DNA of 64,000 nt, taken from positions 33,666,001 to 33,730,000 of the forward strand of contig OZ320319.1 of assembly GCA_976226885.1 (NCBI GenBank), read 5' to 3'. The position numbers and the translations under genes are program-made. Under the pieces are notes generated by a model. It was not told where the DNA came from. It saw only the letters and a list, made by a program, of their open reading frames with translations, and searched no databases. The stretch is from Iphione sp. A-MEVVRFRX5 (Eukaryota). Below are positions 13,186 to 58,978 of the stretch, piece by piece (the stretch's first letter is position 1; the number at the start of each line of letters is the position of its first letter).

Positions 13186-14337
13186 TCAGTCACTTAGGCT
13201 GGAAATGCCGGTGAGGAAGTTCGTGTCGCTGTGCATGATGCCGCGGCACCGGTGGCAGCACAGGATGCGCGTGAAGGCGCGCCGGAAGGTTCGGTTGAAG
13301 AAATAGTAGAGGAAAGGGTTGATGGTCGAGTTGATGTAGCCAAGCCAGAGCACCATCTGCCAGGCGGTGAAAGGGATGCGGTAACCGATGATCGGGTCAA
13401 TGACGTTGAAGATGAAGAAAGGACACCAGCAGGTCGAGTAGGTGCCCATGATGATGGAGAGCGTCTTGGCCGCTTTCCGTTCGTGTCGCATGCTCTTCTC
13501 GCGCTTCTGCTCGCCCAGGGTGGTCATCTCCAGGCTGCGGATGCGCATGGCCTGCCGTGTGGCCTCCTGATAGATGCGCACGTTGACCATGAGCATGAAG
13601 AGAGTCGGCACGTAGAAGATGACCAGCGAGCCGATGAGAGCGAACGGGATGTTGACCAGGAACATGCACGCCTTGCCGTCGGGCGGCGTGTGGCATTTGA
13701 TGACGTCGTCGATGCCGATCTCGTTCCAGCCGTTGAAGATGGGGATCCAGGAGATGAAGACGGGAATGGTCCAGCAGCAGAAGATGAGAACAAACACCGT
13801 GCGCCGCGTCATGATTTGGTGGTAAAAGAACGGGCAGCAGATGGCGATGTAGCGATCCATGGCTAGGCAAGACAGGTGCAGGATCGACGTCGACGTCATC
13901 ATGACGTCGAGACAAGACGCCAGCTTGCAGACGATGCTGCCCAGCTCCCAGTGTAGGTTGACGTGTAGGTTGTAAATGCCGAACGGCATAACGAGCAGCG
14001 CCACGAAGATGTCCGCCACGGCCAGCGACAAGATAAAATAGTTAGTGAGCGTGCGCATCTGGCGGAACATGGACACTGAGCAGATTACGACAGAGTTGCC
14101 GAAGACGGTTAACAGTACAATGAGGCTCAGCACAAACACAATGGCCGACGATTCCCCAGGGGAGTAGTTTATGGGCGGCCCGCTGGCGGCCGCGTTGACT
14201 GCGCCGGACGAGTCTACCGACGCCGGGCAGGGAGCGCTTCCGTTGGCCACCACTTCGTCGGCGGCTGCGCTCGGTTTGTGGATGAGCGTATGACCCATGG
14301 CGGCTGCAACGACAGCTGCAGATTCTTTATAGCTCAT
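13186..14337 (-). CDS. HTR4: Class A aminergic GPCR, 5-HT4 serotonin receptor-like (383 aa, single coding exon)
   Basis: Seven hydrophobic segments, TM1 GN, TM2 LAVAD, TM3 Asp (CLDVMMTS), DRY, CWCPFF and NSTINPFLY. ECL2-TM5 (GWNEIGIDD...CMFLVNIPFA) and TM6-7 (KAAKTLSIIMG...DPIIGY...LWLGYINS...FRRAF..ILCC) closely follow vertebrate 5-HT4 as I recall it. Confidence 0.9.
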   Translation of the reverse strand: MSYKESAAVVAAAMGHTLIHKPSAAADEVVANGSAPCPASVDSSGAVNAAASGPPINYSPGESSAIVFVLSLIVLLTVFGNSVVICSVSMFRQMRTLTNYFILSLAVADIFVALLVMPFGIYNLHVNLHWELGSIVCKLASCLDVMMTSTSILHLSCLAMDRYIAICCPFFYHQIMTRRTVFVLIFCCWTIPVFISWIPIFNGWNEIGIDDVIKCHTPPDGKACMFLVNIPFALIGSLVIFYVPTLFMLMVNVRIYQEATRQAMRIRSLEMTTLGEQKREKSMRHERKAAKTLSIIMGTYSTCWCPFFIFNVIDPIIGYRIPFTAWQMVLWLGYINSTINPFLYYFFNRTFRRAFTRILCCHRCRGIMHSDTNFLTGISSLSD

Positions 14338-19460: not shown

Positions 19461-19466
19461 ATTTAC
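19461..19466. repeat. Left 6-bp target-site duplication ATTTAC
   Basis: ATTTAC directly precedes AGTAGTGTATG (19467) and recurs directly after ...CACTACT (43237). Confidence 0.95.
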
Positions 19467-19557
19467 AGTAGTGTATGAAGGTAACTGCCCTAGACCCCCT
19501 TTAGTGCAAAAAGGTTATTTGGGTGCAAACCACTTGAGTTTCCCTGAACCACTTGAG
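19467..19557 (+). repeat. Left terminal inverted repeat
   Basis: The first 49 nt are the exact reverse complement of 43189-43237, and 71 nt match with 3 mismatches. It then continues GTTTCCCTGAACCACTTGAG, matching the right end after a 63-bp offset. Confidence 0.93.
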
Positions 19558-19582
19558 TTTCCATTTTCAACTTGACCTACAT

Positions 19583-19695
19583 AGATAAGGAGATAGATCA
19601 CGTCATGATAAGGGTTGTCCCTACTTATAGATAAGAGAGATCACGTCATGATAAGAACAGTGCGCTACTTGACTTTTCAAATGATAAGAGATAAG
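19583..19695 (+). promoter_or_regulatory. Subterminal cluster of GATA and CRE/ATF-like motifs
   Basis: Six WGATAAG copies, plus the direct repeat AGATCACGTCATGATAAG at 19595-19612 and 19638-19655. Confidence 0.5.
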
Positions 19696-19714
19696 AGCGC
19701 GCGCGCGCGAACCC

Positions 19715-19716
<2 letters not shown>

Positions 19717-19768
<52 letters not shown>
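19717..19768 (+). repeat. (GA)26 microsatellite inside the Polinton left end
   Basis: Uninterrupted GA run following a (GC)n stretch. Confidence 0.95.
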
Positions 19769-19773
<5 letters not shown>

Positions 19774-20967
19774 TCTGCTGTGTGTGGAGGGGGCCTTATT
19801 CTTTGTTTAATTTTCGAGCCCTTTTGCAGAGCTCTCCAAAAATTCCTGAATCCGGAAATGAATGGCTAAGAAAGAAAGGACTTACCTTGGTAAGGAAATC
19901 CATAACTTTCATCGAGGATATCTTGCGATACGACTCGTAGCTTGCGAAGATTGACACTTATGTGTAGAAATTAGTTGACATCAGTGGGTGTCTTTATGAT
20001 GGAGCAAGTACAAATGATAGATTATATGATTGAAGTTGAATGGAATTGATTTCAGATAGTACAGCGGCTTGGTTAATGAAGATAATAGGCTAATTTCATC
20101 CTGCTTATCATAGGGTCAAAGCTTTTAGATGGATGATGTTACGCGTATAGTAATTACAAGTCTGATTTTTCTTGACTTATGAGGATGGAGCGCTGTCAAG
20201 GCGTAATGCGGGATGCAGAGGAACTAACCCGAGAAATAATTGGTAGAAGAAATTGATCTTAACACATGCGAAGGTCTTTGCATTTATCAACATCCTGTTT
20301 TATGTAACTATATTTTATTTGTTTGATTGTTGGATCCCTAAAAGGGATCCAGCCAAAAATTATTATTCCTGAGTTGGCAGCAGCTCTCGTCGAGATGTCA
20401 CCATTTATTAAAACGGTACTCATCCACTTAAGCGAGCTTGATATTGAAACTAATGATGCGTAAATGGTGTTTCCTTCGGGTGTTTGTTGACATGTTGACT
20501 CTAATGATAAAACTTAGGACTTTGCTCCATGAAAACTATCCGCTGTTCTTACAGTCGAGTGAAATGATCCATTGTAATCTCAGGATGTGTGTAATAAAGA
20601 TGACTTAAAGCTATGTTTCGAGTAGATACATGAAGAATCTCGTCCGACGTAAATAGAACATCAGACGCCATCTTTTGTGAAAGAAAAACAATGCAGATGC
20701 CCTCTGGTGAGAATGAGATAGTTCTCGTGGCTTGGACTTTTGTTTCTTTTATATGTATGTCTAAATTGAAATGTACTCTTCTGTGTAATACTGTATCACT
20801 GATCATGTTGATGATAATGAAAAAAATAAAAGAAGTTGCTCTTCGAATAAATGTTGAGCGGAAGAATTATTAGTCTCCCAGAATGCAATCCATTCGGTCC
20901 CATATTGCGTCTTTGATTGCTATACACGGTACATTACTTGTTCACATTAACCAAAAAACCACTGAGA

Positions 20968-21714
20968 ATGCTTGAAGAAGAATCAACTACCCCCTCGTTT
21001 GATTTAGATGACCATTATTTTGTATCCGCCCTCGATACCAAAAGACATGGGATTAAGAATAGACCGTTTATCTATCTCCGTCACAAAGAAGAGCTTATTC
21101 CAGATATTCCGATGAGATTGGAAGATGTTTTTGATGAAGACTGCTCGTCTGTCAACATCAACCCCCTCGTTGCTCCCCAAGGTGATGACATGTCGGCTCA
21201 GTTCGAAGCACTATCCCATAGATTGATGGACATTTGTCGTCTGTTTTCATATAGTATCCGATTAGTCCGGGAATCACTATTTAAAAATGAACTTTCCCTC
21301 CTGAATATCTCAGCCTTACGTCTCGTGGAGGACATGTGGAATGACACGGTTGAAAAGTCTCGGTCAACCCATTCCGGATTAGAAAGAGGTCTGAGTGTTA
21401 TGGATATAGTGGAAAAGAATATCGAATCCCTGAACATCCCTACAGAATTGAAAGCAGTGATAAAAGAGAATATTTGCAGGAAACGACTGAACCACTTTAA
21501 GTATTGCTTCATAGACGTTGCATTCAGGATGACATGGAATGTGAAATACGAGGAAGAAATTAATGAAAAATTGAAATCAGGTATGGTAGCATTTGCAATA
21601 TGCAGGTTATTCATTTCGTGTAAGTGCGTGTTCCGACCTGTTTGCTTGCAGTGTTATGTGTTCAAACAAGTTGTAACTTGTTCGATAGATAAAACGGTTC
21701 GTCTTCAGATATGA
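20968..21714 (+). CDS. Polinton accessory protein A, unknown function, possible BC-box/Cul-box-like motifs
   Basis: ORF 20917-21714 with first ATG at 20968. A donor GTAAGT at 21620 and acceptor TTTCAG at 21876 would end the protein LFISY* instead of the unspliced tail. Confidence 0.65.
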   Translation: MLEEESTTPSFDLDDHYFVSALDTKRHGIKNRPFIYLRHKEELIPDIPMRLEDVFDEDCSSVNINPLVAPQGDDMSAQFEALSHRLMDICRLFSYSIRLVRESLFKNELSLLNISALRLVEDMWNDTVEKSRSTHSGLERGLSVMDIVEKNIESLNIPTELKAVIKENICRKRLNHFKYCFIDVAFRMTWNVKYEEEINEKLKSGMVAFAICRLFISCKCVFRPVCLQCYVFKQVVTCSIDKTVRLQI

Positions 21715-21965
21715 TAAAGCTGACGTCAGATAGTTATCAAGGGTTCATTAGATAAGATAACAATTGTGTGCGTGTATACAAGTAGATGATAACGAAATAG
21801 ACGTGTTCAGACTTGTTAAGTTTATCAGCTGAAATAAGAAACCCTGAAACAAAGTTTTATTTTGGGTTTGTTTCAGATTAGGTGGGATGAGTGCTTACGT
21901 CATAGCACAGTGTATATAAGATACCTTACAGAGACGTCGTGGGTTCATTCGGCAGCTCTGCAGAC

Positions 21966-23135
21966 ATGGAGACCATATCCGAGCGAGTTCGTGTATGCGA
22001 TGGAGGAGTGCATCTCCATCTGGAAATTCGTAGAATAGGGAAAGCGACTCGTCATCTATCAGTCCGACGCGAGGTCTTTGACACTGCCGGCAATGGATGG
22101 GAGACTCTTCTTTGTGGTCACGTTCTCACTGTTCAACCTGAAGAAAAGACCTACCACATTGAGCTTGCTGACTTTGCCAGCAGGACATATGTGTGCTTTG
22201 AACGGATCGACGAAGCAGCACAAAGAATAAAGTAAGTCTCTTTTCCTCAAATATATTAACTCTTTAACCATAAAGTTGGTTTGTGAACTCCCTGCTTAAC
22301 AATTTTTATATATAAATGTCTGTCATTCAATCCATTCCGATTTTGTAATTGAATGTTTCCATGTAATAAAAAAAAATCGAATATTATATCCATGTGTATT
22401 GTCTCTTTTTCCCCCAGCTACGACTGCTTCAATCTCCTGATCTACGAAGTCGAAGGAATATTGGATTATATGAAGAGGAATCCAATAGACTCGAGCAATT
22501 CATTCCTTGCTCTGGCCGAACGAGAGCGTGAGCGGACCAAGAAGGATGTTGGTTTTCCTTTGCTAAGGAGAACATACAATATGGTGAGACCAAAAGCAGA
22601 TGGCAGCCAATTCACCCGTCGGGCCGAGAACATCTTCATCAATCAGCTGATCTGTGAAGACACCGCCCAAAAAGAACTCATCGACGGGGAGAATATCGAG
22701 TACGTTCCCTTTCCTGCCAATACCATTTCAATGCATGAAGTCATCCAGAAGACGTATGTGTTTCTTCTTGCCACCGAATATCACAACTTGTTGAAAGCAA
22801 GAGGACTTGCCGACCTGGAGACTGATGATGGAGGCTCGCCCTGTCGTATCCCTGAGCATGCCCGTTCTGATGTGATGCATGCCGCCCACATCCGCATCAG
22901 CTTCCAATGACTAGTGGAGACCAGCCAGATGATGATCAATCTTCTGGAGTTGAGTAACGAGGTGAACCATTCACCTCCTACGATTGAATGCTTGAGAGAC
23001 TTCAATGAGAAAGACCATGCTAGTAAAGTCGATCGCATTCTCTGTGGACGTGTCATTAAGAATGGGGAGCTTGACACAGAGCACTACCACATGTATCATT
23101 TCGAGTACGAGTTTTGCTTGTTGGCTCAGATATGA
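21966..23135 (+). CDS. Polinton accessory protein B, two exons (21966-22231, 22418-22910), with possible readthrough to 23135
   Basis: TATA GTATATAAGA at 21912 and ATG in context GACATGG. The intron 22232-22417 (GTAAGT...CTTTTTCCCCCAG) joins ORFs 21939-22235 and 22353-22910 in frame, giving 252 aa. The same frame continues past TGA to 23135 (327 aa). Confidence 0.75.
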
Positions 23136-23587
23136 TAACCTTTTTTTTGTTTGATGCAGCCCGTTAAAGAAAATCTTAGTAATACTTAAATTTGTTTTGC
23201 TATGAGAAGTATGTATTATTATTAGAAGTAGAAGTAATAGCAATATGTTCTAGTTGACATATGTAAATCTATTGATTACATTGAGATTTGTCCATCCCGT
23301 ATAATAGAGTACTAAGACTTTGGTATATAATAAAGGGAAATCACATCATGTAACAATAGGATATGGTAATAAAAAAAATCTTTTTATTAAAACCGAACTG
23401 GTCACCTTTTTCTTTTTTACTTAAAAAAACACCAACTCAATCACGACTACAGTGTCCATCACATTCACTTCTAGAATACAGATGGAAATATGAAGTAATC
23501 ATCACCCGTTTGGTATAGTATAATTACATGATAGCAAACATGAATACTGTTACTACAGTCAAAGTGTCACTGAAAAGAAAAAAAAAA

Positions 23588-23946
23588 ACATAGCCGACAC
23601 TTAATCATCTCCTTCCTGTGTAGTATAATACGTGTCGCTATAACATCTTTAAATAGATCATATTCTCCAAAAAACGTATACAAAATGAAATGATCTATTA
23701 CATACTATAAAAAAAAATCATCACCTGGATGTAGTTTCTTGTATTTGGTTATATATATATATATAGAGAGAGAACATAGACGACATATAATCAGCACCTG
23801 CCTGTGTAGTAAAATCTTTGCCGCTATAACATCCTTAAATAGATCATCATATCCAACAAAGTACAAAATATGATGTTATCTAATATATAATATACCAAAC
23901 CATCACCTGGATGTAGTTTTCTTTCTGTGTTTTGATATATATATAT
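23588..23946. repeat. Diverged tandem duplication, period about 182-186 bp
   Basis: GCTATAACATC(T/C)TTAAATAGATCAT at 23637 and 23823; CATCACCTGGATGTAGTTT at 23719 and 23901; a partial third copy AATCAGCACCTG near 24021. Confidence 0.8.
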
Positions 23947-24431
23947 GTATGTATCTTTCAATAAAAGCGAACGGTTCAACCGGAATATAAGATATAAGCA
24001 TGCATTAAGAACGAGTTACTAATCAGCACCTGTGGTTTGTAAATATTTCTTCATCATACCATACTATTATATATGCATGTATATAAGTAAACTTATCTCA
24101 CTTTGTTTCATATATCGGGATACAATGCTAGACTAGAAAAATTTTTGCTTTCATATATCTTTCTTTTTTCTATAATAAAATGATCTGTTCCCTCTATTTA
24201 TCTCACGTCCTAAAATGACGTACCAAACTTGGTCATAAAATAGTGTTCAGATCTTTTTTTTTTTGAGGTCGTTCGTATCACACAGTACTAGTGTACAATC
24301 ATAAAAAATAATATAAAAAAAAAACACAATTACTTTCTGTCAAGTAACAAATGTATAACTTCCTCCGAGTAAATATACATGATGAGAGCCTCCAACTTTT
24401 TCTATTTTTTTTCTAAAGCAGCTCAGCTCTG

Positions 24432-24640
24432 ATAGTCGGCAGCATTTTAAAAAAAAAACGTGTTTCTCACACCAAGGCCTACTTCTTCTGGAATATGCAT
24501 ATTAACATCGATACTGGGCAGTATTTGAAAATGTGTTTCTCAGTCCAAGCTGTACATGTTCTTGAATGATAGACGACATTTAAAAAAAAAATGTTTTATA
24601 GAAAGTATTGTCTCACGCCAAGTGATAGATCTTCATTCAC
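24432..24640. repeat. Three diverged units with a 73-bp period
   Basis: TCTCAnnCCAAG at 24465, 24538 and 24611, each preceded by an ATTT-(A)n segment. Confidence 0.6.
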
Positions 24641-24715
24641 ATCCTGTTGTTCTTGGTTCACAATGGAGGAGCCTTCATATTCCACTGCAACCATCGTCAA
24701 TGCCACGTTACCGAG

Positions 24716-34158: not shown

Positions 34159-37100
34159 TCATAACTCCATCTCTCTCGCGCGTTCTCTGTCACGAAGCTC
34201 CTCCCACAGCTGCCCTAGACGATTCTCTCCCCTGAATTCCGAGGGTGAGGATATCTTAGCAAGAGCCGGCGTCATTCCCACCCCCCAGAAACGATCCGAG
34301 TCGGCAAAGACTATACGTCGATCGTGATCCAGTTCTCTCTTCGCTTCCGCCACCCTGTTCAATTTCAGTGTCAGAACTTGTCTCATCGTGTCCTCTCTCC
34401 CGATATGTCTCCACCTTTCACTCAGATCCACAAAGTCGGCATAGGCTCTCATTTCTGTGTGATCTCGAGTGAGATGAATGGCTCTGGCTTCTTCTTCCGC
34501 ATTGTGAAATCTAGCCAATTCGTAAAGGAACATGTGCTCTGAGGAGATGAACCCTAGCCCCATATCGCAAACGTAATGCGGACCGAGTACGTCTCTTGTC
34601 CCGACACCGAATACGTAATTGTCGACGTCGTCACTCCACGGACACAGGGTGATGGAGAGGGGGGTGGTGTGTATGCCATCATCGTGAACCACTCGTTTGG
34701 CATAGAAATACGAGAATCCCGTCCTTTCCTGCTTGTAGGTGAAGACGGTGTCGTCGACGGCGCGCATCCCCATATTGACTCCAATGCGTGACTTTTGGGT
34801 GCTGAGAACCGAGCGGTAGATTTCCATGAGTTGGACGAGACGAGATTTGGAAATGCCTTTACAGCTCAGCTTGTAGTTGTCTGTAGACGTCTCCAGAATG
34901 TAGGTTTTGCTGTTGAGGGCAACGATCCCTTCTCCTCGAGCCTCCTCTTTCATGATGCCTGGTACCCGTCTGTCGTACGTCTGGTGCTGTGGACAGCACT
35001 CGCGCATGAACCAGACGGGCTTGGTAGAATCACTGCAATTGCCTAACACTTCGTCCAGATAGAGTTTTCTCTTCTCCTCGGACATGGCTTCGGGTAGATT
35101 GGAGGACGACAGAGCTAGATAGGCACTGTCCGTGTCCATGGTAACGTATTCGAAATGGTCCCTGTCGATCAGTTTATCGATGCAATCGTAATAGAAACCC
35201 AACATCGTTAATTTGGCATATTGAAGGATGAAGAAACCCAAATAGATCGGAAGGTCTAGGACGATGCGGGGCTTGGCTGCTTGGATTTCGTAGAATCCTT
35301 TGTACTCCACCATCTTCCTGAAAGAAGGAGAGTTGACAGCTAACGATGCCTCGCACTTGTCGGAGAAATAATTGATGGCAGTCTGCTTCTCCTTCTGCAT
35401 GATGATGCCACCATATGCAGAATTACCCAGGAGTTTCATGGTGTCTGCTATGACTGCCATGTCGGGGTTGGCATCGCCTCGTCTACGGGCTGCCGTGATT
35501 TCTTGTTCAAAGTCACTGAAACAGGTGGACGAGTTGAATTCGATCACCTGGTAGACGTTAGTCACCCTCAATCCATGCTCCAGGTACCATTTCAGGAGTG
35601 GGGTGGCGATGAGGGTTTTCTTAGCCCTCATTGCCCCTACCAAAAGCTGACGAGGACGTTCCGACAACTCGAACTGAGCCACGTGTCTTTGCATGTGTGA
35701 ACCGATATCACAGGTACGAACGCTAGCTTTGCCAAAGAGAGGGGACATCTCTTCGAAATAACTCCATGGCGGGAGACTCTTCTCTTTTCCCTCACTCCAG
35801 GCTTCTGGAACTTCTATGTCCACTTCGACTGCTCCGAAAAGGTCACCTTTTTCTACAGCTCTAAGGATTTCCTGCCCACTTATCTTACCATATCGAACTC
35901 TGGAGAACGGGGGGAGAAGAATGTCTCTGGCTATGCTCTGCAATTCCTCTTTGCCGTCCATGATTTTTCTGAAAGAACACTCTGTCATCGTGACTACCCT
36001 ATAGTCCATCCACTCCAGAAAAGTTTTCTTCTGTTCCGTTCTCTTCTGTCGCTTTCTTCTGTCCTGTTCGTTCATTTTCCCCTTCATGCAACGATGACCG
36101 TGAAAGAAGCAACCGTTGAATTCGAATACCGTGCCACGGCTTGGGTTGTTTCCTTTCCCAGCAGTAGAGGGAGACATGAATCCGTCGACCTGATACGGTC
36201 CGATGCGTAACTCACCTCCGTCTCGGTTCTTGGCGTGATGAATGGTTTTCTTCCTTCTTCGCGACTCCCATTCCAACCACACGAACATGGTCTGGTACGT
36301 AGAGAATTTCTCGACCACAAAGCCATACTCCTGCCTTCGTCGTGTGAAGTTGCCCATCGGCATCTCTTTGGCTATGGCCGAGAGATATAGACTGTTGGCA
36401 TCGAGTCCCAGAATGGACTTGCAGGGTGACAATCCATCTCGAATGAGAGTCTTGTCCTTCTCGTGATATCTGGTGAAGACGATGGCTGGACCACCCACCA
36501 GATTACTCTTGAAGGTCTTGTATATATCTTCCTGAGAACCATTGAACAAGGGAAACACGGTTCCCTTAGAGGAGGCAGACTGGAACAGCATTCGTCGAGC
36601 CATGCCCGGAGCAGATACGGATATTTTGAACAAGTCGAAACCCCGCTGGAAATAGAAAGCCTGCAACTTTTCCACTGCCTCGACGAACGGGAGCACGTCT
36701 AGGTTGTTATAATAAATCAGAAGGTCTGCCAGACACTGCATGTTCTCTTTCCTCCATACTTCTTGGAGGCTTTCGTAATCAGCGATGGAAATGTTACTTC
36801 CTTTCAAGCTAGAGTAGAATGCCTCGTGTGGAGGAAGCTCTGTCTCCTTCAACTTCTCGGGGCAGTCAAGGTACTCGTAGCAGAAGAAACTCTTTTCTTG
36901 AGAAGCACCGTACGCCTTAAGAAAGCGAGCATAGGACACACCAGGCGACAGATACTGACATATGTCCAGGAACTTGAAGCGTACAGTGGAAATGGAGATG
37001 TACGTGTTCTCTCGCTTGATCACAAATGAACCTGGTTCGTCCACCTGGAGGGCTCTCAAGAGTTCCCCCTTCAGTAAGTTCAGGTCGTAGCGGGCAGAAT

Positions 37101-39641
37101 TGAAACCCAAGACGGGTAGCGAACTCATGTAGGCATAGAACCTACCTTGTATTTTTTCTACCGTCTTCTTATACTTCAGGGCAGGGTGGGTCCGATCCCC
37201 CTCCTGGCGCTGACCACCTCTGTCATCTTCATCATCGGCATCATCATCATCGTTAGCACCACCAGCAGCATTGGCAGCATCATCGTTGCCGGCAGCATCC
37301 GCATCATCGTCGACATTCTCTTCGTCCTCACGATGCAAGACGAAATCGACCAGTTCGTCGTCTTCGACGACATGATCTTGAACGGGTGCATCTCCCAACT
37401 GTCTCGTTATTTTGTCGTTTGTCTCCTGCAGTAGTTCCTCCAGTTGACTGACCACGTCGCCCCATTTTCGTTTTGCTCTCTCTAGAGCTTCTTCCTGAAT
37501 AGATTCCAGGTATTCGAGCATCTGATTAACTAGCGTTTTCATGTCTTCGTGTAGGAAACACTGAGGATTTGTGAAACCAGGTACGTTGCTGCACACGGAG
37601 ACTGAGATGGTCTCGTGTCGATGAATCCACGTCACACTAGGGGTGTCTCTTTCTCCATCGAGTCTTCTGAGAATAGCCTCACAGTCAAATACGGCGAAAT
37701 CTTCATAAGTCCGTTCCTCAGGGGAAACGACTATTCCCAGTCCTTCCAGATCATCGAATATGGTGGAAGGACTGTTGTAGTATCCCCCTCGGTACACATA
37801 ACGTGTTCTCAGGGGACATACTTTGGAGTGCCTCGCAAAGTGATGTCTCTTGCCGAAACATCGTCGACAGAGACGGCACTGAAACTTCTTGGCGTATGTC
37901 TCGAAGTCATTGACATAAGAGAGGTGACCTGCATGAAGGTTAAGGTGCATAATGTCAGGAAAACGAGAGAAAGGTTTCCTAATGACGGATATGCTTCCAT
38001 TCATCTTCAATTCGTATACATAGATGCCGACTTGGAAACATTCCTCAAAGAGAGTCAAGTCGCGCAGGTCCACACCCCTAGATTTACTGGGGTCGGGAGG
38101 TAGTGTGCGGTTTCCTAGACTTGATTGGAACTGACGCCATGACAAATAGTACTCTTTCACGGCTCCTTCTACGTCGTTTTCTTGATGGTGTACTGCGAGA
38201 CACCTAAAGGCGCAAAGAGCATCGTTATGATCATCTAATGAAGTGATACATCGTTTATTTCGCACAAACTCGGGAAGGAAACCTCGACCCATCAGATACG
38301 TGGTGCGCGTAATGAAAAATACGACATTGGTTATCATGGCTACCTGCCACTTAGTGTCTGGTCGGTTCCGGGTGAAGTAATTCTCCGGGTCCACTGCCCT
38401 TATGGTGTCCATTACCTCAGACAGGTCACTTGCCCGGGAAACCACTATGGGTTCGTTAAATACCATACTGTTACTATAGGGGATGAAATAACGATATTCA
38501 CCCGTCTGAACATTACGCAATATCATACCGAACGACATATTCACCTTGAAGGTATGGTCTTCTCTTTCGAAAATGGTCTCCAAGAATTGGTGAAGTTCCT
38601 GGGGACCACGTGACAGATCGTTGGTGGGGAAATTGTAATCGGTGGTGATTTCTCTATCTGTATGGTGGGCCAGGATGTGGCGCTGATTGGCTCTATATAC
38701 CCTTTCCAGTTCTGGCTCTATGGTCTCCCCTTCCCTGTTGCACCAGGGTGGATGCTGATTGTTCTCGCTTGGGGTCTTGTCCCTTTTTCTTTTTTTACTT
38801 TTGTCCTTCTTTCCTCGCTCACCATCCTTCCACGGTTCGACCTGGAGGGGTATACCCTCTTCATGGAGTGTGGTTCCATTCCCTCCGCCCCCGTGTTGGA
38901 TTCCTCGATGTAGATACAACTCGCGCTTATTCTCGAACGAATCTCCACATTTTCTACATCGCCATTCTAATCGGTGTGAGTGACTTAGAAGATGCCTTCG
39001 CATAAGTGAAGCTTTCTTAAAAGACCGGGTACACTTAGAGCACTTGTATTGCTGACAGCTTTCTTTGTGTCGCCTGGCATTGCCTTGACGCTTAAATTTC
39101 TTCAAGCACTTCTCACATTGCCTTTGTTTTACAACCTGTATTTAAAAAACAATCGAAGTAAGTTATCTTCATGGTACTTTGTTTTCTTATAGGAACTTCA
39201 TACGACGAGTATATGACAAAAAACAGATTGCAGTATGCTGGCTCGCAGTAAACAGGTAAGGAAACACAAATACACAGGTTTTTTACTTACTTCTTCTATC
39301 TCGTCAGATGAGGGTGATGATGACAGGGAATATAGACTCTGCATTTCTTCTCTTGGAAGTACTCTCACCAATCCTTCTTCTGGCTGTTTATTTTTCACAT
39401 AGAGAGAGAGAGAGAGACAGAACAAAATAGGATAACTGACTGCATCCAAACATGCACACACTCTCACGCGTATGGAAATTGATACATTTTCTATCATTAT
39501 TTCAGTCGAACAGCTCATTCAACTCACTGGTCGGCGACTTGGCCCCGGAATAGACTCATATCGGACAGATGCTACATCGGACGACACTGCAACTGATGCT
39601 GGAGGAGAAGTTGTGGTTGTTCTTGCTGGTGGTGGTGCTGC

Positions 39642-39673
<32 letters not shown>

Positions 39674-40210
39674 AATGTTGGGTGATTTCATCAGCCGTAC
39701 GATCATCTTGAGAAGTCTATACAAGGAATACATGTACATGATGTGATGCACAAATCCAAAGATTAGAAAACTCAGTTCTACTAAACCATACCAAAGAAAA
39801 AAAAAAAAAAAAAAAACTTTACTTACGTCTTGATCAGTCTTCGAATGAAAACTAACATCCTGTTTGCTTGGTGTGAAGACATTATCCGAGGAATGAGATT
39901 GCTGGGTTTGTGAAGGCATGGATGTTGGTAGCAATAAATTATTCAATAGATCCACCTGCAATGATTTGTGAATTATATAAATGTATATACAGTATAGTAA
40001 TCAATTGTTAAATTATCCATTAGTACAGTAGAACGTTTTTTGGGGACTTACCTCACTACTGTTCAAATGATTGCTTCTTAATTCATTTTGTCTCTCCAAT
40101 ACGATGGGATTATTCATCAATCCCTTCGCTGCAGCCCATGAGATGAGTTCCTCCTCGGATGAGAAAGAAGCTACAAGTCTCCTCAATAGGTCAACTGCAG
40201 CTTGAGCCAT
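34159..40210 (-). CDS. POLB: Protein-primed DNA polymerase B polyprotein, five exons (40210-40052, 39955-39827, 39716-39528, 39383-39291, 39135-34159), about 1848 aa
   Basis: ExoI VFDCE, ExoII FNSARYD, ExoIII YNNLDV; Pol motifs DANSLY, KLLGNSAYG and MDTDS. All four introns are GT(A/G)AGT...AG and phase 0. Also three N-terminal zinc fingers, an OTU-like Cys/His pair, a Vsr-like insert and a NADAR-like C-terminus. An in-frame ATG at 40222 would give 1852 aa. Confidence 0.92.
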
Positions 40211-40246
40211 GGTGGAGAACATTAAGTTAGCTATTGATAGTACACC

Positions 40247-40252
40247 TTTATA
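40247..40252 (-). promoter_or_regulatory. TATA box of the spliced PolB gene
   Basis: Minus-strand GTATATAAAG, about 37 nt before ACCATGG at 40210. Confidence 0.6.
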
Positions 40253-40562
40253 TACCTAGCCTGTATCATGAATATGTTAATAATAATGCTGACATCACTG
40301 TCACATAATGTGATCACATGTCCGTGATGTGGTGCAATAATTGAAAAGAAAAAAGGTCAAATTGAAATGCTAAATGTTTATTCGATGATTGTGATCAGAT
40401 TCATGAATAAGAGTTACATATTTAAAATAAACAAAAAATTCATTAAAGGAATTAATGGTTCATTTACTATCTTCCAAAAACAACCTAAAAAATATATCCC
40501 AGGTCGCTTCAAGGGCAAATACAGTCGAGGACGAGGATAATCTCTGAGATGTCTCAATATGT

Positions 40563-41647
40563 TTAGTTACAGTGGCAGGCAGCGCTATCATCCTTTGTCT
40601 GTCAAAAAAGAAATATAAAAAAAATAATTTCATTATTGCTTTCAAATTTGTCACTGAAGATTATCATAATTCAACAACAAAGAAATTAATATAATACACT
40701 AATTTCTCTTCTAGTCGTTGCATTTTTTTTATATTCATTTAACATCTTACCTTGTCTTTTTTCTTCTCATTCTCTCTCTCCAATTTGTCAATAACTCGAT
40801 CCACTTGTGCCTCTGTCATCCCATACCAGTCGCAGTAGTTTTGGGATTGTCCTTCCTGACCGAAGTTCTTCACCTGACCTTGGTTGTTTTTTAGAATGTT
40901 TTCACTTAGAAAAACCTTCAATGTCGAAGGGAGAGGGAGCCGTTGGATCTTTTCGTGGGTCCTTTTCTTCAGGTTGGAGTCTTCCACCAGACGAACCAGA
41001 TGAGAAGGGGAAAATACAGAATGATCATTGATTTCATCATCATCATCATCATCATCGGCATCTCTAACATCTCCTTCCATCAGATTCGCATCACCATTCC
41101 TATTAGTTTCTTGGATAACTGCTACGAAATCACCCATTTGTTCATATATGGCATGTTCATCGGTATCTTCGAGCACACCGTCTTCGTTTTCGATCATAAA
41201 CTCGATGGTGGGTTTGGATAGACTGTGCCATATGCTTCCTACGACTGCATTACCCGCTTGAGTTAGTAAACTGAGTTTGCCGTCAAACAGGATGCTCCTC
41301 AAAGCAAGCATGCTGGACTTGAACAGACGATACACCTCCAATGGACGACGTTTCAGTTCATATATCTCGTCAGTAATCACCATTGCATGATCAGAAAGAT
41401 CCATCACACATAAAGCACAGAGAGAATCACCCCGTTTCACCACTTGACGTCCCATTGGGGCGGGTCCGAGTATGTCCTTCATATGTACTTCGTTCTTTTC
41501 CCAATTCCAGTAATAGTCACTCATGTATAATACTACTGGACGATGTACTTCGTTCTTTTCGTGAATATATAGTTCAGGAAAATGCCGATTCCCATGCAGA
41601 TGTGGATCATAAGAACGAATTATGTATTTGCCAGCTATATCCATCAT
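40563..41647 (-). CDS. Polinton accessory SOCS-box protein (41647-40751, probable second exon 40598-40563)
   Basis: 302-aa ORF containing FSPSHLVRL...KIQRLPLPSTLKVFL after an acidic tract. Donor AAG/GTAAGA at 40750 and acceptor TTTTTTGACAG at 40599 would replace VRC* with TKDDSAACHCN*. Confidence 0.75.
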
Positions 41648-42426
41648 GTTTTAACAAAGGGGGTGAAGCTTCTGCGTCTAGTCCGGACTGAGGTTCAATA
41701 ACAAATGTAATGCTCCCAGAAAGATAGAGCTAGGGTTATATGATAACCCGAAACAGATTATAACAACCAAAAAAAAATTAAGTGTTATGTATGGACATTC
41801 TCAACCTTCGCTTAGTATTCTTCTGGGTATCATTGGTCTCAAGTATCTTTCAGTAAGGGTTTCAGGAAATGCATCCTTACATTCATCCAAACCAATTCAA
41901 ATCATTCCACACGATCAGGACAAAAGAAGCAAGGACTATATCTAGTGTAATATCTTCATCCCAGCGGTATGTACAGATAATGTAATCACTTGTAAACGTG
42001 TTCAGACATTTCAGTCAAGGACTTTATCAGTAATATCAAAATACAATAGTGTGAACTCTTCATATCGCCTCACCATCGTCAACGATAGGATAATGTGACG
42101 TCAGTTGCAAGGGAAATTTCTTTATCTAAAGATGGCTTAGAGCCTTTATCTTTTCTATAATAACCATATCCCATATGGTTTATATGTATTGTGAATCCAT
42201 TACATCCACCGCACACATACGCCATCTAGTGTAAAACCCAAGGTCGCGCGTCAGACGCTATAAAATGTCATCAGACGCCATCTGGATGAGCTCTCCCGAC
42301 TTGCATTTTTGCAAACTCTAAAAATCAAATAAAGACTTACCTAGTCGTCTCTTTTCCACACAACAAAGTTCATAGTGACTAGCATTCAGATACAATTATT
42401 TGAACTGACTCGCATCAACATAAATT

Positions 42427-42528
42427 AAAATGGTCACCGACACTAATTACAAACTCGTCCGCATACTTGGGGAATCGAACCGGGTATCTCTCGTTTCTCC
42501 AACCTATGCTTAATGAGAGTTTCTATAG
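42427..42528 (-). ncRNA. Candidate Pol III-type structured RNA, copy 1
   Basis: Perfect B box GGTTCGATTCC (42481-42471), A-box-like AGCATAGGTTGG, nested stems AAACTC/GAGTTT and GCATA/TATGC, ending GACCATTTT. Confidence 0.5.
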
Positions 42529-42725
42529 TGTCAGGACGATACGTCAGACGTTAACAACTGATGTCATGCACATTGGAGCCGGACAGACGTTTTTTCAGAC
42601 CCGAAATCGAGAATGAAACATTAACAGGTCATTCTTGAACACAGAACATTGCTCAGTCAAGGTGATATGAAGAAAGACTTATTTAAACTGCTTCAATTCC
42701 ACCTATAACACATATAAAATTGGAC

Positions 42726-42821
42726 AAAATGGTCGCACCCACTACACTGACTCTTCACACTCGGGAATCGATCCATCTTTCCAGTGGTTCGGTCGGCGAG
42801 TGCTGTAAGAGAGTCATTATA
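42726..42821 (-). ncRNA. Candidate Pol III-type structured RNA, copy 2
   Basis: B box GGATCGATTCC (42774-42764), stems GACTCT/AGAGTC and CACTCG/CGAGTG, ending GACCATTTT; homologous to copy 1. Confidence 0.45.
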
Positions 42822-42953
42822 ATGGGAGGACCTAATGATGTCCTTCAAATGGTATTGTCAATGCTTCCGCGCTCAAGGACATCGATGGGAAGCGCTTTCA
42901 TTCATACATATGCTTAACACTGATCGTGTCTAGAGTCGCTCCAACTTCAGGGC

Positions 42954-43080
42954 GCGGGAAATTTGAAATTATATCTTATCTCTACCTACTTATCTTTCAT
43001 AAGGGCGGGAAATTTGAAATGATATCTTATCTCAAGTAGAGGATCCATGCGCGGGAAATTTGAAATAATCTCTCTTATCT
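42954..43080. promoter_or_regulatory. Three E2F/CDE-CHR composite motifs interleaved with GATA motifs
   Basis: GCGGGAAATTTGAA at 42954, 43005 and 43051; CTTATCT at 42975, 42989, 43026 and 43074. Confidence 0.6.
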
Positions 43081-43083
43081 TTT

Positions 43084-43237
43084 CTCAAGTGGTTCAAGGA
43101 AACTCAAGTGGTTTATGACGATCTCAAGTACCTCTGTACTGACTTGACCTTCTCGAAAATCGAACTTCAAGTGGTTTGCACTCAGATGACCTTTTTGCAC
43201 TAAAGGGGGTCTAGGGCAGTTACCTTCATACACTACT
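43084..43237 (-). repeat. Right terminal inverted repeat
   Basis: Reverse complement of the left terminus; carries three TCAAGTGGTT copies (43085, 43104, 43167). Confidence 0.93.
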
Positions 43238-43243
43238 ATTTAC
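43238..43243. repeat. Right 6-bp target-site duplication ATTTAC
   Basis: Identical to 19461-19466. Confidence 0.95.
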
Positions 43244-58803: not shown

Positions 58804-58978
58804 NNNNNNNNNNNNNNNNNNNNNNNNNNNNNNNNNNNNNNNNNNNNNNNNNNNNNNNNNNNNNNNNNNNNNNNNNNNNNNNNNNNNNNNNNNNNNNNNN
58901 NNNNNNNNNNNNNNNNNNNNNNNNNNNNNNNNNNNNNNNNNNNNNNNNNNNNNNNNNNNNNNNNNNNNNNNNNNNNNN
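58804..58978. other. Assembly gap (175 N)
   Basis: Run of N characters. Confidence 1.

What the first reader, a model, noticed from the sequence alone, without database searches (positions are those of the whole stretch)
19461..43243. Apparently intact, recently inserted 23.8-kb endogenous polintovirus with a large accessory gene set
The TSD is perfect, the first 49 terminal bases are perfectly inverted, and all replication, integration and virion genes have open frames with catalytic residues present. Besides the core block, about 9 kb of the left arm and 4 kb of the right arm carry spliced accessory genes and candidate ncRNAs that look directed at the host. The element could be reactivatable.
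Basis: partly seen in the sequence, partly recalled or inferred. Interest (0 to 1): 0.75.

Follow-up and report, generated by a model that had tools for sequence, protein, structure and literature searches.

The report
Intact endogenous polintovirus in animal genome
A 23.8-kb virus-like transposon (Polinton/Maverick type) sits in an animal chromosome with all of its hallmark replication, integration and capsid genes unbroken; this is a well-known kind of element, and its most unusual feature is a DNA-repair-like NADAR domain fused to its polymerase.

Summary
An element of 23,771 bp (19467-43237) is bounded by a perfect 6-bp duplication (ATTTAC) and by ends that are perfectly inverted for 49 nt.

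Nine co-directional, tightly packed ORFs lie inside:
- a P-loop ATPase
- an rve + chromodomain integrase
- a single-jelly-roll penton
- a double-jelly-roll major capsid protein
- an adenain/S273R-type protease
- three small orphan ORFs

I found no stop or frameshift, and the polymerase catalytic columns are intact. This is an endogenous polintovirus in an animal genome. The closest polymerase relatives are at most 55% identical, and the named ones come from bivalves and starfish.

A recent insertion is plausible. There are no nonsense changes in 8,955 nt, which implies less than about 0.7% neutral divergence, and CpG is not depleted. Copy number, polymorphism and expression could not be tested.

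The accessory claims are only partly supported:
- two type-I membrane mucin-like proteins
- an inward-facing pair of paralogues at the two ends, one with a sub-threshold SOCS-box hint
- otherwise orphan ORFs
- no Rfam hit and no excess RNA structure
- one credible splice candidate, 5' of the polymerase

Verdict: a new member of a known kind. The NADAR-polymerase fusion is the most interesting by-product.

The parts
19461..19466 (.). Left copy of the 6-bp target-site duplication (ATTTAC)
19467..43237 (.). Whole element, 23,771 bp
   Evidence: TSD and TIR bounds. GC is 0.44-0.52 in the core and 0.37-0.40 in the arms.
19467..19542 (+). Left terminal inverted repeat. It is perfect for 49 nt (19467-19515) and 93% over 76 nt.
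19528..19655 (+). Left sub-terminal repeats: two tandem copies of a 19-nt unit that also occurs inverted at the right end, and two copies of a 17-22-nt unit found only on the left
20917..21714 (+). L265, an orphan ORF in the left arm that points inward. It is a distant paralogue of R302.
   Evidence: BLASTP 21% identity over 140 aa, E 5e-8. No Pfam hit.
21939..22235 (+). 98-aa ORF, unverified
   Evidence: no Pfam hit
22353..22910 (+). 185-aa orphan ORF, unverified
23587..23950 (.). 186-bp tandem duplication (2 copies, 78% identical) inside an ORF-poor, AT-rich stretch at about 22.9-25.0 kb
25036..25548 (-). 170-codon Pro-rich ORF without an ATG start. It may be an exon or may be non-coding.
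25825..26997 (-). TM390, a predicted type-I membrane protein: N-terminal hydrophobic signal-like segment, Cys cluster, Ser/Thr-rich stalk, one C-proximal transmembrane segment and a short tail
   Evidence: Sequence; hydropathy; no Pfam or PDB hit
27667..28656 (+). TM329, a second predicted type-I membrane protein with the same architecture and a stalk up to 70% Ser/Thr. It is transcribed divergently from TM390.
   Evidence: no significant similarity to TM390; no Pfam or PDB hit
28898..29395 (-). Cysteine protease of the adenain / ASFV S273R type (165 aa)
   Evidence: PDB 6lj9 S273R E 3.4e-7, with the His and Cys regions aligned; adenain E about 0.09. Peptidase_C5 E 0.0027, below the cut-off.
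29376..30716 (-). Major capsid protein, double jelly-roll (446 aa)
   Evidence: 7 relatives, best 51% identity. AF2 pLDDT 72, pTM 0.76. Foldseek hits: Sputnik MCP E 2.5e-13, PBCV-1, iridovirus and mavirus MCPs.
30700..31029 (-). 109-aa very basic protein (34 K+R against 6 D+E). Inferred to be a core or DNA-condensing protein.
   Evidence: no family hit
31044..31436 (-). Penton (minor capsid) protein, a compact single jelly-roll (130 aa)
   Evidence: 141 representative clusters, nearly all 120-145 aa. AF2 pLDDT 93.8. BFVD top hit is a Drosophila-associated adintovirus 2 protein, E 2.8e-7, TM 0.72. PDB best TM is 0.62, to a 167-residue PBCV-1 capsid chain.
31475..32632 (-). Integrase: rve core plus C-terminal chromodomain (385 aa)
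   Evidence: PF00665 E 1.4e-8 and PF00385 E 8.4e-9, both above cut-off. PDB hits to CBX7 chromodomains and foamy-virus integrase cores. The acidic triad candidates are D81/D83, D161 and E195.
32605..33102 (-). 165-aa Pro-rich basic orphan ORF that contains a perfect (GCG)16 repeat
33093..33419 (-). 108-aa basic orphan ORF
33483..34118 (-). P-loop ATPase (211 aa). Inferred to be a packaging ATPase of the A32/FtsK type.
   Evidence: Walker A at residue 21 and Walker B at residue 89. Pox_A32 E 0.0076 and RNA_helicase E 0.0016 are both below cut-off. PDB search was uninformative.
34159..39344 (-). Polymerase gene as one part: a long open frame plus a candidate short 5' exon. Domains: C2H2 fingers 38875-39117, exonuclease and polymerase motifs 34900-37686, NADAR 34186-34566.
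   Evidence: 774 relatives, best 55% identity. Invariant Exo I-III, A, B, C and KxY columns. PF03175 hits 10 of 20 aligned relatives, zf-C2H2 18 of 20, NADAR 8 of 20. NADAR E 7e-12 in the window protein itself. Splice signals seen by eye only; the exons were not joined.
40739..41647 (-). R302, an orphan ORF in the right arm that points inward. It is a paralogue of L265 and gives a sub-threshold SOCS-box (Cul-box part) match.
43162..43237 (-). Right terminal inverted repeat
43238..43243 (.). Right copy of the target-site duplication (ATTTAC)

Best explanation
This is a full-length integrated polintovirus (Polinton/Maverick, order Orthopolintovirales, close to the proposed Adintoviridae) in the chromosome of an animal.

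Shown:
- The rve-type integrase footprint is present: a 6-bp target duplication flanking inverted ends.
- The conserved module is complete and unbroken: protein-primed family-B polymerase, P-loop ATPase, integrase, penton, double-jelly-roll capsid protein and adenain-like maturation protease.

Inferred from what is established for the family:
- The polymerase copies the linear genome from its inverted ends.
- The capsid proteins, ATPase and protease build and mature an icosahedral particle.
- The integrase, whose chromodomain would tether it to chromatin, inserts the genome into host DNA.

Inferred from this sequence:
- The insertion is young. There is no nonsense or frameshift in 8,955 nt of hallmark coding sequence, CpG is undepleted relative to the flanks, and the 49-nt ends are perfect.
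- The arms carry lineage-specific genes whose products are mostly orphans. They include two type-I membrane, mucin-like proteins and one old paralogue pair facing inward from both ends.
- The NADAR domain on the polymerase most likely removes ADP-ribose from guanine bases in template DNA.
For: Ends: TSD and TIR.

Polymerase: 774 relatives. Exo I-III and motifs A, B, C and KxY are invariant. PF03175 hits 10 of 20 aligned relatives. Single-frame alignments run over about 5 kb.

Capsid protein: AF2 model with Foldseek hits to virophage and giant-virus MCPs, E down to 2.5e-13.

Penton: a family of proteins of about 130 aa; a confident beta-sandwich model; best viral match is an adintovirus protein, E 2.8e-7.

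Integrase: rve and Chromo both above Pfam cut-offs.

Protease: S273R E 3.4e-7.

Gene packing: nine co-directional ORFs with spacers of at most 63 nt.

Age proxies: 4.5% of possible single substitutions in the six hallmark ORFs would be nonsense and none is present. CpG o/e is 0.91 in the core against 0.72-0.78 in the flanks.

Animal host: an intronless aminergic GPCR lies 5 kb to the left.

Family definition: size 13-25 kb and TSD 5-8 bp match PMC10748475.
Against: - The window's own polymerase does not reach PF03175 even at E<=1. Membership rests on relatives and on motif columns.
- ATPase family assignment is sub-threshold.
- The polymerase frame lacks an ATG before its conserved zinc fingers, so expression of the full protein depends on an unverified 5' splice.
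- The TIR is short. It is perfect for 49 nt and then decays quickly, against the 100-1,500 bp usual for the family.
- No second copy, empty site, transcript or sister genome was examined, so 'recent' and 'active' are untested.
- The host species is unknown.
Confidence: 0.88

Rival explanations
1. The outer arms (about 19.5-25 kb and 39.3-43.2 kb) are not a host-directed accessory module. They are mostly non-coding, regulatory, decayed or captured DNA with a few genuine lineage-specific genes.
For: - The arms have GC 0.37-0.39 and CpG o/e 0.75-0.83, close to the host flanks (0.40-0.41 and 0.72-0.78) and unlike the core (0.495 and 0.91).
- The stretch at 22.9-25.0 kb is ORF-poor and holds a 186-bp duplication and A/T runs.
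- Every arm ORF is an orphan in Pfam and PDB.
- There are no Rfam or tRNA hits and no excess of RNA structure.
- No LxCxE 'Oncoid' motif is present.
Against: - L265 and R302 are significantly similar paralogues kept as open frames at both ends (E 5e-8). This argues for real, selected genes.
- TM390 and TM329 have complete signal/stalk/transmembrane architectures.
- No repeat is shared between the arms and the host flanks, and no nested transposon was found.
Confidence: 0.35
2. This is an old, fixed insertion whose genes are kept open because the host has co-opted them (domestication). It is not a young, autonomous element.
For: Nothing here excludes fixation, because no population or cross-species data were available. 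The TIRs are similar but imperfect beyond 49 nt.
Against: - Co-option rarely preserves every hallmark gene together with perfect termini and a perfect TSD. All six hallmark genes and three small interleaved ORFs are open.
- CpG is undepleted relative to the flanks.
Confidence: 0.07
3. This is an assembly artefact: a free viral genome, or a contaminant, wrongly joined to host sequence.
For: None specific. The window has one N run, at 58804-58978, but it lies 15 kb away from the element.
Against: A perfect 6-bp duplication flanks the exact ends of the inverted repeats on both sides, with host-like sequence continuing in both directions. This is the signature of integration, not of mis-joining.
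Confidence: 0.02

Closest known systems
Polintons/Mavericks (Orthopolintovirales) of marine invertebrates
   Same: - Gene set: pPolB, rve integrase, ATPase, adenain-like protease and major and minor jelly-roll capsid proteins.
- 6-bp TSD, TIRs and a size within 13-25 kb (PMC10748475).
- The ZnF-pPolB(-NADAR) architecture is shared by many relatives. The named ones come from Pinctada, Solemya, Tegillarca, Mytilus, Asterias and Patiria.
- Such elements make up as much as 16% of some bivalve genome assemblies (bioRxiv 10.1101/2025.04.19.649669).
   Different: - Best identity found is only 55% for the polymerase, 51% for the capsid protein and 43% for the penton.
- The TIR is shorter than usual.
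- The arm genes have no detectable relatives in Pfam or PDB.
Adintoviruses (proposed Adintoviridae; PMC8502044)
   Same: - Animal-associated, with PolB, integrase, adenain, ATPase, hexon-like and penton-like genes.
- The penton model's best viral structural match is a protein of Drosophila-associated adintovirus 2.
- Accessory genes sit upstream of PolB.
   Different: - No PLA2X, GasderminX, cupiennin, Bcl2 or IAP family hit in Pfam scans.
- No LxCxE 'Oncoid' motif.
- The adintovirus paper does not mention NADAR.
Mavirus, Sputnik and other virophages
   Same: Double-jelly-roll capsid fold (Sputnik 3j26 is the top hit; mavirus 6g44/6g45 are also hit), plus rve integrase and protein-primed PolB in mavirus.
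   Different: Sequence identity is 11-14% only. Virophages infect protists together with giant viruses, whereas this element lies in an animal chromosome.
Nematode Mavericks carrying cargo and a fusogen (bioRxiv 10.1101/2022.07.12.499685)
   Same: A polintovirus core plus added membrane-protein and cargo genes.
   Different: The two membrane proteins here are short mucin-like type-I proteins with no detectable similarity to any known fusogen. No similarity was found in Pfam or PDB.
NADAR guanine de-ADP-ribosylases, such as the DarT1-NADAR antitoxins (PMC11543638, PMC11125620)
   Same: The Pfam NADAR domain scores above its cut-off (46.3 bits against 35.1).
   Different: Here it is the C-terminal domain of a viral polymerase rather than a stand-alone antitoxin. 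Catalytic residues and activity were not tested. No PDB NADAR was reached by a single-sequence search.

Membership tests
Polinton/Maverick (Orthopolintovirales) | [quoted passage not shown] | tested here: met
   774 relatives. 10 of 20 aligned relatives hit PF03175. Exo I-III, A, B, C and KxY columns are invariant, including in the window protein. The window protein alone does not reach PF03175.
Polinton/Maverick (Orthopolintovirales) | Retrovirus-like (rve) integrase | tested here: met
   PF00665 at 35.4 bits against a cut-off of 32.6, plus a chromodomain at 35.7 against 25.1. PDB integrase cores are also hit.
Polinton/Maverick (Orthopolintovirales) | Double-jelly-roll major capsid protein | tested here: met
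   AF2 pTM 0.76. Foldseek probability 1.00 to the Sputnik, PBCV-1 and mavirus MCPs.
Polinton/Maverick (Orthopolintovirales) | Single-jelly-roll penton protein | tested here: met
   pLDDT 93.8, all-beta model. BFVD adintovirus protein E 2.8e-7, TM 0.72. PDB matches are not significant by E-value, and the best TM of 0.62 is to a 167-residue PBCV-1 capsid chain that I could not confirm to be the penton.
Polinton/Maverick (Orthopolintovirales) | A32/FtsK-type packaging ATPase | tested here: inconclusive
   Walker A and B motifs are present. Pox_A32 scores 16.2 bits against a cut-off of 22.8. PDB search was uninformative.
Polinton/Maverick (Orthopolintovirales) | Adenain-like (Ulp1-type) cysteine protease | tested here: met
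   ASFV S273R E 3.4e-7 with the His and Cys regions aligned. Peptidase_C5 is sub-threshold.
Polinton/Maverick (Orthopolintovirales) | TIRs, a 5-8-bp TSD and a length of 13-25 kb | tested here: met
   6-bp TSD and 23,771 bp. The TIR is 49 nt perfect and 76 nt at 93%, which is shorter than the usual 100-1,500 bp.
Adintoviridae (proposed) | Virion accessory genes PLA2X or GasderminX/cupiennin, and 'Oncoid' genes with LxCxE upstream of PolB | tested here: not met
   No Pfam hit to such families. No LxCxE in any accessory ORF. Only Pfam-level sensitivity was used, so distant homologues could have been missed.
Adintoviridae (proposed) | Animal host | tested here: met
   The flanking host gene is a rhodopsin-family aminergic GPCR (7tm_1 E 1.8e-62; 5-HT4 receptor E 4.4e-82). 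The species is unknown.
NADAR superfamily | NADAR domain profile match | tested here: met
   PF08719 E 7e-12, at 46.3 bits against a cut-off of 35.1, over residues 1514-1640.
NADAR superfamily | Catalytic residues for guanine-ADP-ribose hydrolysis | not tested
   No PDB NADAR was reached by single-sequence search. Only 4 of 154 columns are invariant among 9 C-terminal domains, one of which is DUF4326.
SOCS-box proteins | BC box plus Cul box matching PF07525 | tested here: not met
   R302 scores 16.9 bits against a cut-off of 23.5, E 0.0078, and matches only profile positions 15-38. This is a hint, not membership.

The most novel reading that the evidence does not exclude
The NADAR domain welded to the polymerase is a viral counter-defence: it strips ADP-ribose from guanines that host (or rival) DNA ADP-ribosyltransferases place on the replicating viral genome. 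If so, a sizeable share of the 'metazoan NADARs' whose role is called unclear in the literature would in fact be polintovirus genes. Basis:
- 27 of the 120 best polymerase relatives listed carry PF08719.
- PMC11125620 lists metazoan NADARs in arthropods, nematodes, molluscs, echinoderms, sponges, cnidarians and amphioxus, phyla that (from my own knowledge) are rich in Polintons.
- No paper in the searchable library links NADAR to Polintons or Mavericks.
- That guanine-specific DNA ADP-ribosyltransferases exist in clams and butterflies comes from my own knowledge, except for pierisin, which PMC11125620 mentions.
Probability: 0.25. Interest if true: 0.6.

Novelty: new member of a known kind. Interest (0 to 1): 0.35.

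Why it matters
Endogenous polintoviruses are very common in invertebrate genomes, so another one is not surprising. Copies in which every hallmark gene, both ends and the target duplication are intact are the useful ones. They give a clean reference for the gene content of a lineage whose nearest relatives found here are only about 50% identical. This copy also shows which non-core genes travel with the virus: two membrane mucin-like proteins and an end-located paralogue family. The polymerase-NADAR fusion points to DNA ADP-ribosylation as a possible axis of conflict between animals and these viruses. It also offers a simple explanation for part of the puzzling distribution of NADAR domains in animals.

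Tried and rejected
- Pfam, PHROGs and PDB sequence searches of all accessory ORFs found nothing above threshold.
- The word search with the 130-aa ORF was blank. I therefore spent the single large search on it.
- The exact-sequence look-up of seven window proteins found none in the collection, so it gave neither the host nor a copy number.
- A nested transposon in the left arm was rejected: no repeat is shared with the flanks, and no internal TIR/TSD pair was found.
- A long diverged TIR covering the arms was rejected at DNA level. Only one protein pair is similar between the arms.
- Similarity between TM390 and TM329 was rejected: BLASTP E>1.
- ncRNAs: Rfam gave 0 and tRNA search gave 0. Windows with z<-2.5 make up 5.4% of the arms against 6.0% of the flanks. 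The two most extreme windows fell to z -3.3 and -2.3 with 200 shuffles.
- 'Oncoid' LxCxE motif: absent.
- A Vsr-like insert in the polymerase: 4 of 20 relatives hit weakly, and the window protein does not (E 0.27).
- Searches failed on term format. One search timed out and was repeated in a smaller form.

Full report
**Observation.** The hexamer ATTTAC lies at 19461-19466 and again at 43238-43243. Between the two copies, the sequence starting at 19467 is the exact reverse complement of the sequence ending at 43237 for 49 nt. The repeat finder extends the arms to 76 nt at 93%, and a local alignment traces similarity with indels to about 180 nt. The element is 23,771 bp long.

Both ends carry a sub-terminal 14-19-nt motif. 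It has two perfect tandem copies on the left and one perfect plus one degenerate copy, inverted, on the right. A second 17-nt motif is repeated twice on the left only.

G+C rises from 0.37-0.40 in the outer arms to 0.44-0.52 between about 26 and 40 kb. The window has one N run, at 58804-58978, far outside the element. I left it untouched.

**The conserved block.** Nine ORFs run co-directionally on the minus strand from 39105 down to 28898. Their spacers are at most 63 nt, or they overlap by 10-28 nt. This is virus-style packing.

*Polymerase.* The 1,648-codon frame at 34159-39105 has 774 relatives at E<=1e-3 in the word-indexed search. The best is 55% identical. The named relatives come from bivalves (Pinctada, Solemya, Tegillarca, Mytilus) and starfish (Asterias, Patiria).
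- Among 20 aligned sequences, 10 hit PF03175 (organellar/viral PolB), 18 hit zf-C2H2 and 8 hit NADAR.
- In that alignment the following columns are invariant, including in the window protein: D474/E476; N669, Y673 and D674; Y799 and D803; D902 and Y907; K1224, N1228, Y1231 and G1232; D1324-T1325-D1326; K1400 and Y1402.
- I label these columns Exo I-III, motifs A, B and C, and KxY. The labels come from my general knowledge of family-B polymerases. The columns themselves come from the alignment.
- tblastn of the relatives gives single-frame alignments across 34120-39141, so there is no frameshift or stop.
- The window protein alone does not reach PF03175, even at E<=1. Its only direct polymerase hit is a weak PHROGs match.
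- Its own Pfam hits are C2H2 fingers at the N-terminus and NADAR at residues 1514-1640 (E 7e-12, above the cut-off).

*Capsid protein.* The 446-aa ORF (29376-30716) has only seven relatives in the word search, the best 51% identical. The AF2 model has pLDDT 72 and pTM 0.76. It matches the major capsid proteins of Sputnik (E 2.5e-13), PBCV-1, an iridovirus, faustovirus and mavirus. It is therefore a double-jelly-roll capsid protein.

*Penton.* The 130-aa ORF (31044-31436) was blank in Pfam and in the word search, so I spent the one large search on it.
- It found 141 representative clusters, almost all 120-145 aa long, the best 43% identical. The ORF is therefore full length for its family.
- The model from a 72-sequence alignment is a confident all-beta sandwich, with pLDDT 93.8.
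- Its best viral match is a 161-aa protein of Drosophila-associated adintovirus 2 (E 2.8e-7, TM 0.72). Next come 160-200-aa phycodnavirus proteins.
- In the PDB nothing is significant by E-value. The best TM score, 0.62, is to a 167-residue chain of the PBCV-1 capsid.
- The PBCV-1 penton is described as a compact eight-stranded jelly roll (PMC6344570). I could not confirm that the matched chain is that protein.

*Integrase.* The ORF at 31475-32632 passes the Pfam cut-offs for rve and Chromo. It also hits CBX chromodomains and foamy-virus integrase cores in the PDB. The acidic triad candidates are D81/D83, D161 and E195.

*Protease.* The ORF at 28898-29395 matches the ASFV S273R protease (E 3.4e-7), with the His and Cys regions aligned, and matches adenain weakly.

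*ATPase.* The ORF at 33483-34118 has Walker A and B motifs. Its family hits are only sub-threshold (Pox_A32 E 0.0076). Calling it the packaging ATPase is an inference from its motifs, size and position.

*Small ORFs.* Three small ORFs are interleaved with these genes. One is very basic, with 34 K+R in 109 aa, and I infer that it is a core protein. The other two are basic or Pro-rich orphans.

*Breaks.* Among the hallmark genes I count 0 stops, 0 frameshifts and 0 insertions.

**The polymerase start.** The long frame has no ATG ahead of the zinc fingers, yet 18 of 20 relatives keep those fingers. Directly upstream, the minus strand shows a textbook acceptor (a pyrimidine run followed by AG) in phase with the frame. 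About 155 nt further upstream lies a textbook donor that follows an 18-codon stretch opening with ATG.

I read this as a probable short 5' exon. No tool predicted the intron and no relative could be shown to share it, so it stays an inference. The 18-codon piece is below the 20-residue minimum of the search tools, so it was not searched on its own either. The positions of these splice signals are in my notebook.

**The arms.** I can defend three things in them.

1. *Two membrane proteins.* TM390 (25825-26997, minus strand) and TM329 (27667-28656, plus strand) are transcribed divergently.
   - Each has an N-terminal hydrophobic, signal-like segment, a Cys cluster, a Ser/Thr-rich stalk (up to 40% and 70% Ser/Thr in 40-residue windows), one C-proximal transmembrane segment and a short tail.
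   - They have no significant similarity to each other or to anything in Pfam or the PDB.
   - The Cys cluster reminded me of an LRR N-terminal cap. That is a resemblance by eye, not a test.
2. *A paralogue pair.* L265 (20917-21714, plus strand) and R302 (40739-41647, minus strand) are distant paralogues, 21% identical over 140 aa at E 5e-8. Both point inward from the ends. Two open, diverged copies argue for real genes that have been resident in the lineage for a long time. R302 gives a sub-threshold match to the Cul-box half of the SOCS box (E 0.0078, 16.9 bits against a cut-off of 23.5). This is a hint of cullin-ligase hijacking and nothing more.
3. *The rest is weak.* There are a few orphan ORFs and an ORF-poor, AT-rich stretch with a 186-bp duplication. 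The arms' G+C and CpG values are close to those of the host flanks.

Other tests of the arms were negative:
- No repeat is shared with the flanks, and no nested element was found.
- Rfam (gathering thresholds) and the tRNA search found nothing in the whole window.
- In a folding scan, 5.4% of arm windows had z<-2.5, against 6.0% of flank windows.
- The two most extreme windows dropped to z -3.3 and -2.3 with 200 shuffles. The first is an AU-rich hairpin just 3' of the R302 stop.
- No accessory ORF has the LxCxE motif that defines adintovirus 'Oncoid' genes (PMC8502044).

**Age.** The perfect TSD and 49-nt ends amount to 55 paired positions without a difference. That bounds divergence between the two ends only to below about 5% (my calculation).

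The open frames say more. In the six hallmark ORFs (8,955 nt, each counted on its own), 4.5% of all possible single substitutions would create a stop, and none is present. With equal substitution rates and no selection after insertion, zero events implies less than about 0.7% divergence at 95% confidence. The bound is lower still if frameshifting indels are counted. This is an inference.

CpG o/e is 0.91 in the core against 0.72-0.78 in the flanks. That fits a short residence in a CpG-depleting genome.

The quick decay of TIR identity after 49 nt is better explained by naturally short, asymmetric ends than by age. Age-related decay of that size would not have spared 9 kb of ORFs.

**Host.** Five kilobases to the left lies an intronless rhodopsin-family GPCR (13186-14337, minus strand). 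Its best solved relative is the human 5-HT4 receptor (E 4.4e-82). The host is therefore an animal. The window is not human-like: humans have no such intact element, and nothing in the window suggested human sequence. The species could not be determined.

**Comparison with what is known.** Size, TSD, TIRs and gene set fit the Polinton/Maverick definition: 13-25 kb, TSD of 5-8 bp, and pPolB, integrase, capsid genes, ATPase and protease (PMC10748475). Elements of this kind make up as much as 16% of some bivalve genome assemblies (bioRxiv 10.1101/2025.04.19.649669).

It resembles adintoviruses in host kingdom and in its penton, but the adintovirus hallmark accessory genes were not detected (PMC8502044). 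Nematode Mavericks show that polintoviruses can pick up membrane proteins and cargo (bioRxiv 10.1101/2022.07.12.499685). The membrane proteins here are unrelated to any known fusogen as far as I could test.

**By-product.** NADAR enzymes remove ADP-ribose from guanine in DNA, and their role in animals is called unclear (PMC11543638, PMC11125620).
- Here NADAR is the C-terminal domain of the viral polymerase.
- 27 of the 120 best relatives listed carry it as well.
- One aligned relative has DUF4326 in that position instead.
- No paper in the searchable library links NADAR with Polintons or Mavericks.

- I did not fetch the DNA of related elements by any route (look-up of encoding contigs, the search for related loci, collection scans with the DNA search, accessions). 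I left out cluster look-ups of the relatives' proteins for the same reason, since I could not tell whether they are barred. As a result, copy number, synteny in relatives and sharing of the intron were not examined.
The consensus lines that the alignment tools printed were not used.

- two short motifs copied from the window's own sequence;
- the LxCxE pattern quoted from PMC8502044;
- a generic C2H2 spacing pattern.

The family motif names used as labels come from my general knowledge.

**Verdict.** The reading as an intact polintovirus is supported. 'Recent' is plausible but unproven. The accessory and ncRNA claims are largely unsupported. Activity cannot be judged from sequence. This is a new member of a known kind.

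Noticed in passing
window 34186-34566 (-): A NADAR domain is fused to the C-terminus of the protein-primed polymerase. 27 of the 120 best relatives listed also carry PF08719, and one aligned relative has DUF4326 in that place. No paper in the searchable library links NADAR with Polintons or Mavericks.
   Followed up: partly
window 13186-14337 (-): A host gene: an intronless 383-aa rhodopsin-family aminergic GPCR whose best solved relative is the human 5-HT4 receptor (E 4.4e-82). Its exact sequence is not in the protein collection.
   Followed up: partly
window 32844-32892: A perfect (GCG)16 microsatellite inside the 165-aa ORF, which encodes a long proline run on the minus strand.
   Followed up: no
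window 40645-40764 (-): An AU-rich hairpin immediately 3' of the R302 stop codon (z -3.3 with 200 shuffles). A donor-like sequence overlaps the last codons of R302, so the gene might continue into a downstream exon.
   Followed up: partly
window 19694-19773: A (GC)n(GA)n microsatellite just inside the left end, about 230 nt from the terminus.
   Followed up: no
window 26998-27666: A 670-bp spacer between the divergently oriented membrane-protein genes TM390 and TM329. It is a likely shared promoter region.
   Followed up: no
window 37546-38658 (-), polymerase residues about 189-516: A conserved region between the zinc fingers and the exonuclease domain, with invariant Cys/His columns (C298, C302, C410, C413, H426, C430) and no Pfam match. 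It may be a further metal-binding or priming domain.
   Followed up: partly
   Followed up: no
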